A DNA stretch of 64,000 nt from Botryllus schlosseri (lineage: Eukaryota): contig CM119378.1 in assembly GCA_051294905.1 (NCBI GenBank), forward strand, positions 8,804,001-8,868,000, given 5' to 3'. The notes beneath the pieces are model-generated. The model searched no databases and was not told the DNA's origin. It saw only the letters and a program-made list of their open reading frames with translations. A program made the position numbers and the translations under genes. Shown here in pieces: positions 10,096-61,796 of the stretch; within the stretch, counting starts at the first letter, position 1, and every line of letters begins with the position of its first letter.

Positions 10096-10439
10096 TTAAT
10101 GATACCGAGGTTGCAGCCTACCGGGCGCTATTAGCGGCGGCTGTACTATCCTCGAATGTCGGTTCATCCGAGTAGGGCCATGCCTCTGTCCCTGGCCGGA
10201 TATACCCATCGCTGAATGATCTTCCACAACGGACGATATCTCTTGCGGGCACCGTTCCGGGTATATACATTGTCCGCCGTGTTCCACCTTGCCTGCGGGG
10301 CATTGGCAGCCGGACACGCACGGCATGTAGCACTGCGCGGCTATCTTTTCGGGAGGTAGATTACGGTTTGAGCATGTCCTTTTGCACGGCGATCCGCATT
10401 CGTCGAAGACATAACCCCGTTGGTACGGACACGTAATGT
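10096..10439 (-). CDS. Last exon: TIL domain plus short C-terminal tail
   Basis: [25 protein letters not shown]...[29 protein letters not shown] shows the TIL 10-Cys pattern. The acceptor is at 10439 (phase 1) and the stop at 10096. Confidence 0.93.
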
Positions 10440-61400: not shown

Positions 61401-61796
61401 CGCCGTTTTGACAGGGAGCTCGGTAGCAATGATCTATCAGTTCACATCGTAGTCCGGTACGCGCTGGCGGGCATTCGCAGGCGAAACTACCTCTGCCGAT
61501 GACCCTGCATCGCCCGCTGTTGAGACATGGATTCGGTCTGCAGTGAGCCGAAAACAATTAGCGGATATGTCTTAACGCATTAGCGCATACAGTTTTGTCA
61601 GCTTGCCTGCACGGGTGACGATTTTGGCATCTGTCTCCGGAATGCGTTTCCGGACACACGCATCTAAATCCGCTTCCGGAGTCTTCGTTTTCGCACCGGC
61701 CGCCGTTCAGGCACCGGTTTTCGGCGCAGTAGTCCACCATCTCGCAGTGTTGGCCGCGAAATTTCGGCAGGCAAGAGCAGTCGTAACCTCCCGAGT
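10096..61796 (-). CDS. Giant mosaic extracellular-type protein, at least about 4,360 aa and 5'-incomplete: (EGF-Kunitz-GACC module-tyrosinase-like-G[YF]D repeats-Cys modules) x2, then VWC x4, acidic exon, VWC x27, VWD-C8-TIL
   Basis: 79 exons traced by hand from 61796 to the TAA at 10096. All junctions are phase-compatible, 77 introns are GT-AG and one is GC-AG, and the summed CDS is 13,088 nt. The least certain points are the first acceptor (61796 vs 61825), the acceptor at 41261 and the donor of the acidic exon (33807). Confidence 0.75.
11008..11835. mobile_element. hAT-type MITE, family B (TIR CAGGGGTC[AG]CCAAC)
   Basis: TIRs CAGGGGTCGCCAAC and GTTGGTGACCCCTG. TSD CTCTAAAG is at 11000-11007 and 11836-11843. 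Confidence 0.88.
11883..12476. mobile_element. hAT-type MITE (TIR CAGGGGCG)
   Basis: Ends CAGGGGCGTGCAAC and GTTGCCCGCCCCTG. TSD GTCTAGAA is at 11875-11882 and 12477-12484. Confidence 0.88.
12507..14778 (-). CDS. KCP: VWD and C8 domains of Kielin/BMPER type
   Basis: Exons 14778-14587, 14017-13803, 13384-13209, 12867-12730 and 12663-12507. Motifs: [49 protein letters not shown] and [21 protein letters not shown]. Confidence 0.9.
14673..14684 (-). other. GDPH motif at the start of the VWD (candidate autocatalytic cleavage site)
   Basis: Codons GGT GAT CCG CAT on the - strand. Asp-Pro autocleavage at GDPH is established for BMPER/Crossveinless-2 and for mucin-type VWD domains. Confidence 0.75.
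14700..32458 (-). CDS. KCP: Array of about 27 tandem VWC (chordin-type cysteine-rich) repeats
   Basis: Exons 32458-32376, 32270-32097, 31427-31251, 31191-31015, 30264-30091, 30028-29943, 29504-29414, 29337-29149, 29013-28920, 28638-28499, 28399-28286, 28226-28046, 27734-27562, 26716-26610, 26553-26375, 26005-25835, 25457-25309, 25251-25082, 23967-23838, 22392-22219, 22157-21984, 21411-21232, 21121-21020, 20056-19879, 19560-19460, 18717-18499, 17939-17709, 17649-17418, 17355-17228, 16812-16623, 15479-15332 and the start of 14778. The pattern C-x-[FY]-x-G...C-x2-C-x-C-x2-G-x3-C...CC-x2-C repeats throughout. Confidence 0.92.
16026..16355 (-). mobile_element. tRNA-derived SINE with a (CCTTT)n tail
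   Basis: The - strand reads TGGTTAAGCGTCCGGC...GGTTCGATTCCCGG (B box), then CCGGGTCAGACCAAAGAC...CTTCCCTGCTTGGCGCTCA, and ends in CCTTTCCTTTCCTTTC. Confidence 0.8.
23090..23362. repeat. Diverged tandem duplication, two copies of about 130 bp
   Basis: CAATCGCATCTGTAA...CAAGATGTCG...CCTCGCAGGCTTTGGCT...AATTGTATAATGATTAGC occurs twice. Confidence 0.75.
24443..24945. mobile_element. MITE with GACTCGAGTC-rich subterminal repeats, probably hAT
   Basis: Ends CAGGATTGTAA and TTACAACTCTG. The flanks CTCATATC and CTCATAGA match at 6 of 8 positions, consistent with a decayed TSD. Confidence 0.55.
33808..34926 (-). CDS. 1119-nt Cys-free Asp/Glu/Tyr/Ser-rich exon inside the VWC array
   Basis: It corresponds to ORF 33785-34924. 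The acceptor is GTATAG|GT at 34926 (phase 1) and a possible donor is A|GTAATG at 33807 (phase 1). About 60 Asp in 373 codons by hand count. Confidence 0.75.
35630..39684 (-). CDS. First four VWC repeats
   Basis: Exons 39684-39514 ([28 protein letters not shown]...DGCCEVCD), 39271-39027, 37669-37499 and 35726-35630 ([16 protein letters not shown]...CCPRCRR). Confidence 0.9.
35825..36883 (+). mobile_element. 5'-truncated, disrupted CR1/L2-group LINE 3' fragment, antisense to the host gene
   Basis: Translates as [11 protein letters not shown]...[14 protein letters not shown]...[18 protein letters not shown]...LQNKAIKLI, typical of the region C-terminal to the RT core. Stops follow, then AATAAA (36857) and a (CT)n tail. 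Confidence 0.82.
39919..40466. mobile_element. Foldback element with inverted arms of about 242 bp and a 63-nt spacer
   Basis: 39919-40160 is the near-exact reverse complement of 40224-40466. Fragments of the arm recur at about 3040-3125, 15740-15880, 20860-20985 and 59580-59710. Confidence 0.85.
40893..42340 (-). CDS. Unit 2 C-terminal Cys/Trp modules (unnamed)
   Basis: Exons 42340-42133 (...[15 protein letters not shown]...[22 protein letters not shown]), 41261-41099 (...[18 protein letters not shown]) and 41039-40893 ([42 protein letters not shown]). Confidence 0.75.
42300..43260 (-). CDS. G-[YF]-[DN] pentapeptide repeat array C (unit 2, after the tyrosinase-like domain)
   Basis: It spans the end of exon 43413-43204, exons 42905-42740 and 42612-42415, and the start of 42340. 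Example: [16 protein letters not shown]...[21 protein letters not shown]. Confidence 0.85.
43204..46222 (-). CDS. Half-VWC linker plus tyrosinase-like (type-3 copper fold) domain 2, degenerate
   Basis: Exons 46222-46094, 45501-45375, 45317-45209, 45147-45092, 44431-44300, 44237-44089 and 43413-43204. Motifs: [42 protein letters not shown] and [19 protein letters not shown]. Confidence 0.88.
46278..48479 (-). CDS. GACC cysteine module of unit 2, interrupted by G-[YF]-[DN] array B
   Basis: Exons 48479-48355 ([17 protein letters not shown]...[13 protein letters not shown]), 47664-47554, 47496-47354, 47067-46928 (...[14 protein letters not shown]) and 46350-46278 ([21 protein letters not shown]). 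Confidence 0.78.
47760..48190. repeat. Diverged tandem repeat, unit about 171 bp, about 2.5 copies
   Basis: CAGGTCA[TC]AATAG[CT]TACA[CT]GGAC recurs at 47822, 47994 and 48164. Confidence 0.8.
48546..49938 (-). CDS. EGF domain and Kunitz domain 2
   Basis: Exons 49938-49769 ([13 protein letters not shown]...[14 protein letters not shown]...[12 protein letters not shown]) and 48647-48546 ([30 protein letters not shown]). Confidence 0.92.
48888..49386. mobile_element. hAT-type MITE, family C (TIR TAGGGCTGGGC)
   Basis: TIRs TAGGGCTGGGCA and TGCCCAGCCCTA. TSD GTTACGGT is at 48880-48887 and 49387-49394. Confidence 0.88.
50422..51209 (-). CDS. Unit 1 C-terminal Cys/Trp modules, paralogous to 40893-42340
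   Basis: Exons 51209-51100 (...[17 protein letters not shown]), 51035-50833 ([27 protein letters not shown]...NW...FTER) and 50615-50422 ([14 protein letters not shown]...[41 protein letters not shown]). Confidence 0.75.
51150..52520 (-). CDS. G-[YF]-[DN] pentapeptide repeat array A (unit 1)
   Basis: It spans the end of exon 52661-52480, exons 51884-51694 and 51427-51269, and the start of 51209. Example: [61 protein letters not shown]. Confidence 0.85.
52480..55437 (-). CDS. Half-VWC linker plus tyrosinase-like domain 1, fully His-less
   Basis: Exons 55437-55325, 54910-54769, 54710-54596, 53569-53468, 53407-53258, 53193-53075 and 52661-52480. Motifs: [56 protein letters not shown] and [19 protein letters not shown]. 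Confidence 0.88.
52790..52940. repeat. Partial family D MITE
   Basis: Shares TTTAAACGACGGTGAAATAAT with the 62548 copy and the AAAAAGTTGCA repeats with both other copies. Confidence 0.55.
53870..53987 (+). repeat. Possible LINE 3' tail remnant
   Basis: ATTAAAGATT followed by (CT)n mirrors the tail at 36857-36883. Confidence 0.35.
55945..57256. mobile_element. hAT-type element, family B, second and longer copy
   Basis: Same TIRs and subterminal sequence as 11008-11835. TSD TATTATAT is at 55937-55944 and 57257-57264. Confidence 0.88.
57838..60122 (-). CDS. Kunitz domain 1 and GACC cysteine module of unit 1
   Basis: Exons 60122-60025, 59142-58973 ([25 protein letters not shown]...[11 protein letters not shown]) and 57903-57838 ([22 protein letters not shown]). 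Confidence 0.85.
60090..61796 (-). CDS. EGF-like repeats (four complete and one partial); upstream exons and signal peptide not found in the window
   Basis: Exons 61796-61607, 61537-61377, 61312-61189 and the start of 60122. Repeats include CLNGGRC, CLNSGRC, CQNGGTC and CLNGASC with C-x-C-x5-G-x2-C ends. Confidence 0.9.
60310..60819. mobile_element. Family C MITE, inverted copy with one TIR missing
   Basis: It is the reverse complement of 48888-49386 over most of its length and ends in GAATCATTGTGCCCAGCCCTA. Confidence 0.75.

What the first reader, a model, noticed from the sequence alone, without database searches (positions are those of the whole stretch)
10096..61796. Giant Kielin-like gene fused to a duplicated EGF-Kunitz-pseudo-tyrosinase-G[YF]D super-module
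Seen: 79 exons splice with matching phases into a single frame of at least about 4,360 aa. The C-terminal half is VWC x31 plus VWD-C8-TIL. The N-terminal half has two units, each with EGF, Kunitz, a tyrosinase-like domain lacking copper ligands and Gly-Tyr/Phe-Asp repeats. The link between the halves is exon 41039-40893 (donor G|GTATGG, phase 1) to exon 39684 (phase 1), and I saw no signal-peptide exon in between. Established: Kielin/KCP and BMPER/Cv-2 are secreted BMP modulators built of VWC, VWD and TIL, and characterised members carry no tyrosinase or Kunitz domains. Inference: a matrix protein coupling BMP-binding repeats to a non-catalytic type-3-copper-fold scaffold and Tyr-rich repeats, possibly for cuticle, adhesive or egg-coat assembly. 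I do not recognise this architecture as a named gene, but cannot exclude unannotated homologues in other invertebrates.
Basis: partly seen in the sequence, partly recalled or inferred. Interest (0 to 1): 0.9.

Follow-up and report, generated by a model that had tools for sequence, protein, structure and literature searches.

The report
Ascidian long-form Kielin/KCP gene
This is a real, transcribed giant gene. It joins two copper-site-degenerate tyrosinase-like modules to a Kielin/KCP-type array of BMP-binding repeats. It is the sea-squirt copy of an old, widespread animal gene already predicted in public databases, though nobody has studied its front half.

Summary
On the minus strand I rebuilt one open frame of 78 GT-AG exons and 4,003 codons (61796 to the stop at 10096). 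It has 31 VWC motifs, VWD-C8-TIL, and two units of EGF, Kunitz, tyrosinase-like domain and G[YF][DN] repeats.

RNA contigs from three independent studies splice exon 41039-40893 to exon 39684-39514 in frame, so the two halves are fused in mRNA.

The architecture is not new. The model aligns end to end (60.6% identity) with Styela clava LOC120330882, residues 906-4925. That protein has about 900 more N-terminal residues, so the gene's 5' end lies beyond the window.

Related long forms, mostly auto-named 'kielin/chordin-like protein', occur in other ascidians, cartilaginous fishes, coelacanth, sturgeon, salamander, hagfish, molluscs, Lingula, chelicerates and a crinoid. Choanoflagellates have the front module without VWC. 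A tree puts the unit duplication before the protostome-deuterostome split.

No unit in any species examined keeps all five copper-ligand positions I could place.

AlphaFold predicts each unit, repeats included, as one compact ordered body. That argues against loose Tyr-rich cross-linking repeats. The repeat array matched no solved structure.

The front half's function is unknown. I found only one passing mention in the literature.

The parts
61613..61796 (-). First exon inside the window (EGF repeat). The acceptor is cacag|AC at 61796, phase 1. The gene continues upstream beyond the window.
   Evidence: Sequence read. Homology to Styela P0040 starts at residue 909 = 61797. P0040 residues 1-908 have no match in 61797-64000.
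61189..61796 (-). EGF repeats, last members of a longer EGF array (three exons)
   Evidence: Pfam EGF E=4.7e-07. Multiple EGF HSPs to P0040.
58973..60182 (-). Kunitz domain 1, split over exons 60182-60025 and 59142-58973. The P1 residue is Glu.
   Evidence: Pfam Kunitz_BPTI E=1.2e-06 and 9.6e-04 on the two halves. P1 read from the translation.
55325..57903 (-). Cys-rich, half-VWC-like region of unit 1 (exons 57903-57838 and 55437-55325)
   Evidence: Exon 57903-57838 fills the only long gap against Styela. Colinear HSP with P0040 1190-1241.
53075..54910 (-). Tyrosinase-like domain 1 (five exons). All five assessed copper-ligand positions are substituted.
   Evidence: Pfam PF00264 E=3.9e-08. Ligand columns A2=Q, A3=N, B1=V, B2=T, B3=I.
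51100..52661 (-). G[YF][DN]xx pentapeptide-repeat array 1
   Evidence: Repeat counts and spacing. Colinear with P0040 and P0011.
50422..51035 (-). Conserved post-array region and Cys-rich 'link-type' domain of unit 1
   Evidence: Colinear with P0011 1008-1073 and P0037 1575-1638. No Pfam family.
48355..49938 (-). EGF and Kunitz domain 2. The P1 residue is Asp.
   Evidence: Pfam EGF E=5.1e-08 and Kunitz E=1.8e-13.
46928..48440 (-). G[YF][DN]xx repeat array 2 (before the tyrosinase-like domain; unit 2 only)
   Evidence: Colinear with shark P0002 573-654.
46094..46350 (-). Cys-rich, half-VWC-like region of unit 2
   Evidence: Colinear with P0002 656-735 and P0040 2061-2129.
44089..45501 (-). Tyrosinase-like domain 2 (five exons). 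It keeps A3 and B3 His only.
   Evidence: Pfam PF00264 E=8.4e-07 and 1.9e-03. Ligand columns A2=N, A3=H, B1=S, B2=Q, B3=H. The orthologous Styela domain has the tyrosinase fold, TM 0.74-0.77.
42133..43413 (-). G[YF][DN]xx repeat array 3 and the conserved region after it
   Evidence: Exon 42339-42133 was the query that found the family.
40893..41261 (-). Last two exons of the N-half, including the Cys-rich link domain (41039-40893)
   Evidence: RNA contigs join them to each other and to exon 39684. 81% identity to P0040 2635-2686.
39685..40892 (-). Link intron (1,208 nt, GT..AG). It holds a roughly 600-bp foldback element at 39879-40478.
   Evidence: The joint is seen in runs X1, X2 and X5. Inverted repeats of 173 nt and 73 nt.
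15332..39684 (-). Array of about 31 VWC (chordin-type cysteine-rich) repeats in about 35 exons
   Evidence: Pfam VWC E=2.3e-13 on exon 39269-39027. 31 CxxCxC motifs. Colinear with P0040 2684-4518.
33785..34926 (-). Acidic Asp/Tyr-rich ORF (379 codons) inside the 35630/32458 intron. It is skipped in the conserved isoform and may be an alternative terminal exon.
   Evidence: ORF listed. No Pfam family. Skipped in the X2 contig. 54% and 25% of its words are held by RNA runs X5 and X3. Absent from the Styela protein.
13209..14778 (-). VWD domain
   Evidence: Pfam VWD E=5.1e-10 and 6.5e-12.
12507..12867 (-). C8 domain
   Evidence: Pfam C8 E=2.2e-17.
10096..10439 (-). TIL domain, C-terminal tail and stop codon (10096-10098)
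   Evidence: Pfam TIL E=1.3e-09. Colinear to the last residue of P0040.

Best explanation
The locus is the ascidian orthologue of an ancient 'long-form' Kielin/KCP gene. The window holds its last 78 exons (4,003 codons).

By comparison with Styela clava, the missing 5' part encodes a signal peptide, a LamG/TSPN-like region, a coiled coil, one VWC and about 16 EGF repeats.

Shown: the mRNA fuses the two halves in frame, and the architecture is conserved across bilaterians.

The C-terminal half has 31 VWC repeats followed by VWD-C8-TIL. It is homologous to KCP/Kielin. By inference from those proteins and from Crossveinless-2, it binds BMP/TGF-beta-family ligands in the extracellular matrix and tunes their access to receptors.

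The N-terminal half consists of two paralogous units that were already duplicated in the bilaterian ancestor. Each unit is predicted to fold into one compact body. A tyrosinase fold without a complete binuclear copper site forms the core. A Kunitz domain with an acidic P1 residue, a small Cys-rich domain, ordered G[YF][DN] pentapeptide-repeat arrays and a Cys-rich link domain surround it.

Inferred: these units are non-catalytic binding or scaffolding modules, not enzymes or loose cross-linking repeats. What they bind is unknown.
For: RNA. Spliced contigs from three studies cross the link junction and the neighbouring junctions. The 35630/32458 junction is confirmed by the loose end.

Gene model. 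78 GT-AG exons form one open frame with 60.6% identity end to end to Styela P0040 906-4925 and only 69 gap columns.

Domains..

Family. Tyrosinase + VWC x22-30 + VWD in shark, Lingula, Limulus and Argonauta. Forty long proteins across chordates, molluscs, brachiopod, chelicerates and a crinoid, plus choanoflagellate proteins with Kunitz + tyrosinase but no VWC.

Colinearity. Shark residues 384-1271 align with unit 2, and Lingula residues 390-1937 with both units.

Unit tree. The unit-1 clade (SH-aLRT 100) and the unit-2 clade (98) each hold ascidians and protostomes. The single vertebrate unit is sister to ascidian unit 2.

KCP orthology. The shark C-half is 40-55% identical to KCP of all vertebrate classes.

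Copper ligands. None of the 25 units examined keeps all five assessed positions.

Structure. The whole unit has pLDDT 88.4 and pTM 0.90. Its residues 262-506 match tyrosinases at TM 0.74-0.77. The repeat array alone has pLDDT 86.5 and pTM 0.71.
Against: Continuity of the whole 52-kb transcript was shown only for 35630-41261. The rest rests on phase-consistent splicing and orthologue models, which are themselves predictions.

Many vertebrate KCP models (mammals, reptiles, Xenopus, most teleosts) lack the tyrosinase part. In smelts the front unit is annotated as a separate gene in one species and fused in another. Short isoforms or separate transcription units may therefore also exist.

BMP binding, secretion and lack of catalysis are inferred, not tested. 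The ligand analysis covers five of six positions and depends on an alignment.

The structure models are of the Styela orthologue, not of the window's protein. I could not inspect coordinates.
Confidence: 0.8

Rival explanations
1. There are two adjacent genes, or an ascidian operon: an upstream gene encoding the EGF-Kunitz-tyrosinase-like units and a downstream Kielin-like gene. They look fused only through read-through or model merging.
For: Ascidians have spliced-leader operons (note s1-278756). Annotation in vertebrates is inconsistent, with front unit and KCP sometimes separate. Only local RNA continuity was tested.
Against: The junction 40893/39684 is a canonical GT..AG cis-splice in phase 1 on both sides. 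It is seen in contigs of three studies that also carry the flanking exons. No stop, no signal-peptide-like first exon and no RNA depth lie between the halves apart from a repeat. Orthologue models in Styela, Clavelina, Phallusia, Lingula and sharks are fused the same way.
Confidence: 0.07
2. The protein is mainly a structural matrix, adhesive or biomineral protein. Its Tyr-rich G[YF]D repeats would be oxidised to DOPA and cross-linked, and the tyrosinase-like domains would act on or hold these tyrosines.
For: Kielin/chordin-like proteins were the most abundant proteins of the argonaut eggcase matrix (bioRxiv 10.1101/2021.07.10.451900) and were enriched in quagga-mussel adhesive footprints (PMC12993968). 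Tyr makes up 5.4% of the N-half against 2.7% of the C-half.
Against: Those proteomic hits are described as VWC-only proteins, not shown to be this long form. The copper sites are incomplete in every unit examined. The repeats are predicted to be ordered and packed into a compact unit. The family also exists in vertebrates and choanoflagellates, which have no shell or byssus.
Confidence: 0.12
3. The tyrosinase-like domains are still active metalloenzymes that use a reduced or alternative ligand set, at least in unit 2.
For: Unit 2 of most species keeps A3, B2 and B3 His. Limulus, Argonauta unit 1 and Antedon also keep A2. The fold is well preserved.
Against: In this window unit 2 keeps only A3 and B3, and unit 1 keeps none. 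B1 is lost in every unit but one, and no unit has all five. From established knowledge of type-3 copper proteins, three His per copper are needed for dioxygen binding.
Confidence: 0.05

Closest known systems
Predicted long-form 'kielin/chordin-like' proteins: Styela clava LOC120330882 (4,925 aa), Clavelina lepadiformis LOC143444348, Lingula anatina XP_013412584.1, Hemiscyllium ocellatum XP_060698749.1
   Same: Same domain order throughout: EGF, Kunitz, G[YF]D, Cys-rich, tyrosinase-like, G[YF]D, link domain, VWC array, VWD. The window is colinear with Styela at 60.6% identity. Ascidians, Lingula, molluscs and arachnids also have two units.
   Different: Vertebrates, and the Limulus and Antedon models, show one detected unit. 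These are computer-predicted proteins with automatic names. I found no experimental study, only a passing remark that some tyrosinase sequences above 3,000 aa carry a kielin/chordin-like domain (PMC11667028).
Characterised Kielin (Xenopus) and KCP/CRIM2 (mouse, human)
   Same: A tandem VWC array followed by a single VWD region. The shark long form's C-half is 40-55% identical to KCP in all vertebrate classes. The orthologues' N-terminus (LamG/TSPN-like, then VWC) resembles Kielin's TSPN start (Kielin's architecture is from my own knowledge).
   Different: Mammalian (about 1,560-1,700 aa), reptile and Xenopus (2,327 aa) models carry no tyrosinase domain. They also have fewer VWC repeats (18 in mouse KCP and 27 in Kielin, from my own knowledge). 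BMP binding is shown for them and only inferred here.
BMPER / Crossveinless-2
   Same: VWC repeats followed by VWD and TIL. Secreted BMP modulator.
   Different: Only five VWC repeats and about 685 aa (my own knowledge). No EGF, Kunitz or tyrosinase-like part. Not the orthologue.
Type-3 copper proteins (tyrosinase, catechol oxidase, molluscan hemocyanin)
   Same: Pfam PF00264 matches on both units. The orthologue model superposes on bacterial tyrosinases at TM 0.74-0.77.
   Different: The copper ligands are incomplete: 0 of 5 in unit 1 and 2 of 5 in unit 2. The domain is embedded in a larger compact unit with repeat arrays.
Choanoflagellate proteins: Salpingoeca rosetta 'mantle protein 9' (1,893 aa) and a Hartaetosiga balthica 2,808-aa protein
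   Same: Kunitz plus tyrosinase-like domain plus repeat and link regions. They align over 93% of the shark unit at 32% identity and serve as outgroup to both animal unit clades.
   Different: No VWC array and no VWD. The S. rosetta protein has a weak, sub-threshold Kazal_2 match.

Membership tests
Kielin/KCP family | Long tandem array of chordin-type VWC (CR) repeats | tested here: met
   31 CxxCxC and 27 CCxxC motifs over about 1,860 aa. Pfam VWC E=2.3e-13 on one exon.
Kielin/KCP family | Single C-terminal VWD region (VWD-C8-TIL) | tested here: met
   Pfam VWD, C8 and TIL on exons 14778-10123.
Kielin/KCP family | Orthology with vertebrate KCP | tested here: met
   The window is colinear with the shark KCP-like protein over unit 2 and the link. 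The vertebrate unit is sister to ascidian unit 2. The shark C-half is 40-55% identical to KCP of all vertebrates. I built no tree of the VWC/VWD half itself.
Kielin/KCP family | Signal peptide / secretion | not testable with these tools
   The 5' end lies outside the window. The Styela orthologue starts with a signal-peptide-like MWKLRTFIRVILIINLLLCVTNG, judged by eye.
Kielin/KCP family | Binds BMP/TGF-beta-family ligands and modulates signalling | not testable with these tools
   Needs a binding or signalling assay.
Long-form KCP-like proteins with tyrosinase-like unit(s) | Unit order Kunitz, (G[YF]D), Cys-rich, tyrosinase-like, G[YF]D, conserved region, Cys-rich link, followed directly by the VWC array | tested here: met
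   Colinear tblastn chains with Styela, Clavelina, shark and Lingula. RNA junction.
Type-3 copper enzymes (tyrosinase) | Tyrosinase central-domain fold | tested here: met
   PF00264 above the gathering score on exons of both units. Orthologue model TM 0.74-0.77 to solved tyrosinases.
Type-3 copper enzymes (tyrosinase) | Six histidine ligands (three for CuA, three for CuB) | tested here: not met
   Of the five positions I could place, unit 1 has Q, N, V, T, I and unit 2 has N, H, S, Q, H. A1 was not placed.
Kunitz/BPTI inhibitors | Six-cysteine Kunitz fold | tested here: met
   Pfam Kunitz_BPTI E=1.8e-13 (unit 2) and 1.2e-06 plus 9.6e-04 (unit 1).
Kunitz/BPTI inhibitors | Basic or large hydrophobic P1 residue suited to serine-protease inhibition | tested here: not met
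   The residue after the second Cys is Glu (unit 1) and Asp (unit 2), read from the translation. That acidic P1 residues make poor inhibitors is from my own knowledge.
BMPER/Crossveinless-2 | Five VWC + VWD + TIL, about 700 aa | tested here: not met
   31 VWC repeats and at least 4,003 aa.

The most novel reading that the evidence does not exclude
The Kunitz / G[YF]D / Cys-rich / copper-less tyrosinase / G[YF]D / link unit is an undescribed extracellular module that predates animals. Its pentapeptide-repeat arrays adopt an ordered fold with no solved counterpart. It was part of the ancestral Kielin/KCP protein and was later lost, or made optional, in amniotes, frogs and most teleosts. If so, it gives the BMP regulator a second, still unknown binding function, for instance tethering to a phenolic or tyrosine-rich matrix partner.
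Probability: 0.3. Interest if true: 0.65.

Novelty: new member of a known kind. Interest (0 to 1): 0.42.

Why it matters
KCP, Kielin and Crossveinless-2 are studied as extracellular tuners of BMP signalling, on the basis of their VWC and VWD parts alone.

This locus gives direct RNA evidence in a chordate that the orthologous gene also encodes about 1,800 residues of conserved, copper-less tyrosinase-like modules. The comparison made here shows that this long form is ancestral: the two units were already present in the bilaterian ancestor, and the module is present in choanoflagellates.

Two things follow. The mammalian protein appears to be a shortened version of the ancestral one. A large conserved module with a repeat fold that matched no solved structure awaits a function.

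For this genome alone the result is ordinary. It is an orthologue of a gene that automatic pipelines already predict elsewhere.

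Tried and rejected
- A purely statistical exon-chaining finder, written for this task, over-predicted at low intron penalties (218 exons) and dropped the tyrosinase exons at high ones (63 exons). 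Adding raw tblastn bonuses made exons run into introns. I kept only the parameter set that reproduced all six RNA-confirmed exons and then corrected it by hand against Styela.
- Pfam finds nothing for the G[YF]D arrays, the link domain or the acidic ORF.
- Fold searches of the repeat array found no solved structure, by Foldseek or by VIA-align over 48,161 chains (no Z of 2 or more). The AlphaFold DB cluster library gave only sequence-like matches of low TM to uncharacterised, mostly bacterial repeat proteins.
- Literature searches found nothing useful: tyrosinase + Kunitz + von Willebrand + ascidian, 'kielin chordin-like' + 'tyrosinase domain', and 'mantle protein 9' gave no paper. Kielin + ascidian gave nothing relevant.
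- The raw-read RNA run X20 gave no reads on the exons, so read-level depth and spliced-leader ends could not be assessed.
- Short proteins from the representative search (P0001 and others) are a genomic ORF that reads on into non-homologous sequence and protein fragments that appear to come from other species, so they are no transcript evidence for this animal.
- The scan's earlier notes hold nothing on the upstream part of this gene.
- I could not submit the spliced protein of the window itself to any search or fold tool, because it has no reference. Orthologues and single exons were used instead.

Full report
WHAT IS THERE

The window is eukaryotic DNA. Earlier notes of this scan call the genome an ascidian, and the best protein matches here are ascidian. 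On the minus strand, stop-free stretches rich in cysteine run from about 61800 down to 10100.

I wrote an exon-chaining program and trained it on the window. I then guided it with tblastn matches to orthologues and kept the setting that reproduced all six RNA-confirmed exons. After six manual corrections against the Styela clava orthologue, the model has these properties:
- 78 exons, every intron GT..AG.
- One open frame of 4,003 codons.
- It ends at the stop codon 10096-10098.

The model aligns end to end with residues 906-4925 of Styela clava LOC120330882 (P0040). Identity is 60.6% over 3,966 columns, with 69 gap columns in all.

The first exon in the window starts at 61796, behind the acceptor cacag|AC in phase 1.

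The exon count (79 against my 78) and the VWC count (31 CxxCxC motifs) agree. The length of 'at least about 4,360 aa' is about 9% too high, unless the 379-codon acidic ORF at 33785-34926 is added.

Pfam on single exons confirms the following:
- EGF: E 5e-08 and 5e-07.
- Two Kunitz domains: E 2e-13; the other is split, at 1e-06 and 1e-03.
- Two tyrosinase domains: E 4e-08 and 8e-07.
- VWC 2e-13, VWD 5e-10 and 7e-12, C8 2e-17, TIL 1e-09.

G[YF][DN] occurs 43 times in the N-half, against 2.5 expected from shuffling (maximum 9) and none in the C-half. Neighbouring copies are exactly five residues apart in 22 cases.

IS IT ONE GENE?

This was the crucial point, and it could be tested directly. I laid contigs of three RNA data sets from three different studies, plus one raw-read run, on 35280-41279.

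All three contig sets show a joint from 39683 to 40892. It skips 1,208 nt with ends CT..AC, which is GT..AG on the minus strand. Single contigs carry:
- 41211-41096 | 41036-40892 | 39683-39512 (run X2).
- 41184-41096 | 41036-40892 | 39683-39512 | 39269-39180 (run X5).
- 41040-40892 | 39683-39512 | 39269-39027 | 37669-37499 (run X1).

So the last two exons of the N-half are spliced in frame to the first VWC exons. A further contig runs 39194-39027 | 37669-37499 | 35726-35629. It ends in 66 loose letters, and the 30-letter consensus reported for them matches 32428-32457 with one mismatch.

Between the halves, RNA depth is zero except over a repeat. No ATG-initiated exon with a hydrophobic start could splice into 39684.

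There is one limit. Only about 6 kb could be laid, so continuity of the full transcript is inferred from phases and orthologues. The raw-read run gave no reads on the exons, so spliced-leader ends could not be examined.

IT IS NOT A NEW ARCHITECTURE

I ran one non-repetitive exon (42339-42133) against 1.84 billion representative proteins. It found 21 relatives. Several are very long, and all carry the name 'kielin/chordin-like protein':
- Hemiscyllium ocellatum XP_060698749.1: 3,102 aa; tyrosinase, 22 VWC, VWD.
- Lingula anatina XP_013412584.1: 4,190 aa; two tyrosinase domains, 30 VWC, VWD.
- Limulus: 3,090 aa.
- Argonauta hians: 3,774 aa.

A second search used the shark unit (residues 384-1271) as query. 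It returned about 40 long proteins with the same Pfam content:
- Three ascidians (Styela clava, Clavelina lepadiformis, Phallusia mammillata).
- Sharks, rays and a chimaera.
- Latimeria, Huso, Pleurodeles, Myxine and a few teleosts.
- Many molluscs, plus Lingula.
- A scorpion, spiders, Limulus and a mantis shrimp.
- The crinoid Antedon.

Two choanoflagellate proteins have Kunitz plus tyrosinase-like domains but no VWC. They are Salpingoeca rosetta 'mantle protein 9' and a Hartaetosiga protein.

The shark protein is colinear with the window's unit 2, link exon included. The Lingula protein is colinear with both units.

The Styela protein has 905 residues in front of the part that matches the window. 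These comprise a signal-peptide-like start, a region that in the shark gives a weak LamG hit, a coiled coil, a VWC and about 16 EGF repeats. Nothing in 61797-64000 matches them, so the gene's 5' end lies beyond the window.

THE DUPLICATION IS ANCIENT

I built a maximum-likelihood tree of 48 unit sequences, rooted on the choanoflagellates. It gives a unit-1 clade (SH-aLRT 100) and a unit-2 clade (98). Each contains ascidians and protostomes. The single unit of vertebrates is sister to ascidian unit 2 (98).

The 'duplicated super-module' therefore predates the protostome-deuterostome split. Vertebrates kept only the second unit.

RELATION TO THE CHARACTERISED PROTEINS

I searched with a short shark KCP model. 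The C-terminal half of the shark long form is 40-55% identical to KCP of every vertebrate class. Mammalian models (about 1,560-1,700 aa), reptile models, Xenopus tropicalis (2,327 aa) and most teleost models have no tyrosinase domain.

Annotation is inconsistent. Latimeria has old models of 2,232-2,337 aa without the domain and a new one of 3,479 aa with it. One 90% cluster holds a 688-aa 'uncharacterized protein' of Osmerus and a 2,576-aa KCP-like protein of Hypomesus.

Whether vertebrates make both forms from one gene is open. For this ascidian the RNA answers it.

THE TYROSINASE-LIKE DOMAINS

The Lingula unit-2 domain aligns to molluscan hemocyanin. This places five of the six copper ligands. 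In an alignment of 25 unit domains from 17 species, none keeps all five.
- In the window, unit 1 has Q, N, V, T, I at A2, A3, B1, B2, B3.
- Unit 2 has N, H, S, Q, H.
- B1 is lost in every unit except that of S. rosetta.
- A2 survives only in Limulus, Argonauta unit 1 and Antedon.

Loss of a complete binuclear site is thus a property of the family as far back as choanoflagellates, not of this gene alone.

Both Kunitz domains have an acidic residue at P1 (Glu, Asp). From general knowledge this argues against classical protease inhibition.

STRUCTURE

AlphaFold2 on the Styela unit 2 (841 aa, 48-sequence alignment A1) gives mean pLDDT 88.4 and pTM 0.90. The Kunitz domain, both repeat arrays, the Cys-rich domains and the tyrosinase fold are therefore predicted as one compact body. 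Residues 262-506 superpose on bacterial tyrosinases with TM 0.74-0.77.

The post-tyrosinase repeat array alone is also predicted with confidence. Mean pLDDT is 86.5, blocks reach 97, and pTM is 0.71. Single beta-bridges recur every five residues.

It matches no solved structure, by Foldseek or by an exhaustive VIA-align pass (no Z of 2 or more). In AlphaFold DB it finds only low-TM, roughly 30%-identical repeat regions of uncharacterised, mostly bacterial proteins.

The caveats are that the models are of the orthologue, repeats can be over-confidently predicted, and I could not inspect coordinates.

HOW IT PROBABLY WORKS

Shown: it is a transcribed, in-frame fusion that has been conserved for more than half a billion years.

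Inferred, from homology to KCP, Kielin and Crossveinless-2 (my own knowledge of those proteins): it is a secreted matrix protein whose VWC array binds BMP/TGF-beta-family ligands, and whose VWD-C8-TIL region anchors or multimerises it.

Inferred, from ligand loss, acidic P1 residues and the compact predicted fold: the N-terminal units are non-catalytic binding or scaffolding modules.

Kielin/chordin-like proteins dominate the argonaut eggcase matrix and are enriched in a mussel adhesive footprint. However, those hits are VWC-only proteins, and the ordered repeat prediction speaks against free cross-linking tyrosines.

NOVELTY

The gene is a new member of a family that public pipelines already predict and name. 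I found no study of the long form. [quoted passage not shown]

Several family-level points seem not to have been written down. The long form is ancestral to KCP/Kielin. The module is pre-metazoan and lacks a complete copper site in every unit examined. Its repeats have no solved structural counterpart. These points give the finding moderate interest.

Noticed in passing
window 39879-40478 (inside the link intron): A roughly 600-bp foldback element with nested inverted repeats of 173 nt (91% complementary) and 73 nt (99%), flanked by a 20-nt direct repeat. RNA contig depth over it runs into the thousands to tens of thousands. It gives only sub-threshold Rfam matches to MIR8562 and MIR6136 miRNA-precursor hairpin families. 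It looks like a multi-copy MITE-type repeat and not part of the gene.
   Followed up: partly
window 33785-34926, minus strand: A 379-codon Asp/Tyr/Glu-rich ORF lies inside the 35630/32458 intron. It is in frame with donor 35630 through acceptor 34926 and ends in a stop. One RNA contig and the Styela protein skip it. Yet RNA runs X5 and X3 hold 54% and 25% of its words. It may be an alternative terminal exon giving a truncated isoform with an acidic tail.
   Followed up: partly
Styela orthologue P0040:2354-2539, corresponding to window 43413-42133: The G[YF][DN]xx repeat array is predicted with high confidence as an ordered structure with one beta-bridge per five residues. It has no match among solved structures. 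Similar repeat sequences occur in uncharacterised bacterial proteins, one of which carries a sub-threshold Pfam PF25296 'Decapeptide repeat region' hit.
   Followed up: partly
window 60182-58973 and 49938-48355, minus strand: Both Kunitz domains have an acidic residue at the P1 position after the second cysteine (Glu in unit 1, Asp in unit 2). Unit 1 also has a four-residue insertion between the second and third cysteines.
   Followed up: no
Related proteins P0034 against P0096/P0098 (Latimeria); P0003 against P0028 (smelts): Public annotations disagree on whether the tyrosinase-like unit belongs to the KCP gene in vertebrates. There are old short and new long models for the same species, and one protein cluster holds both a separate and a fused model.
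   Followed up: partly
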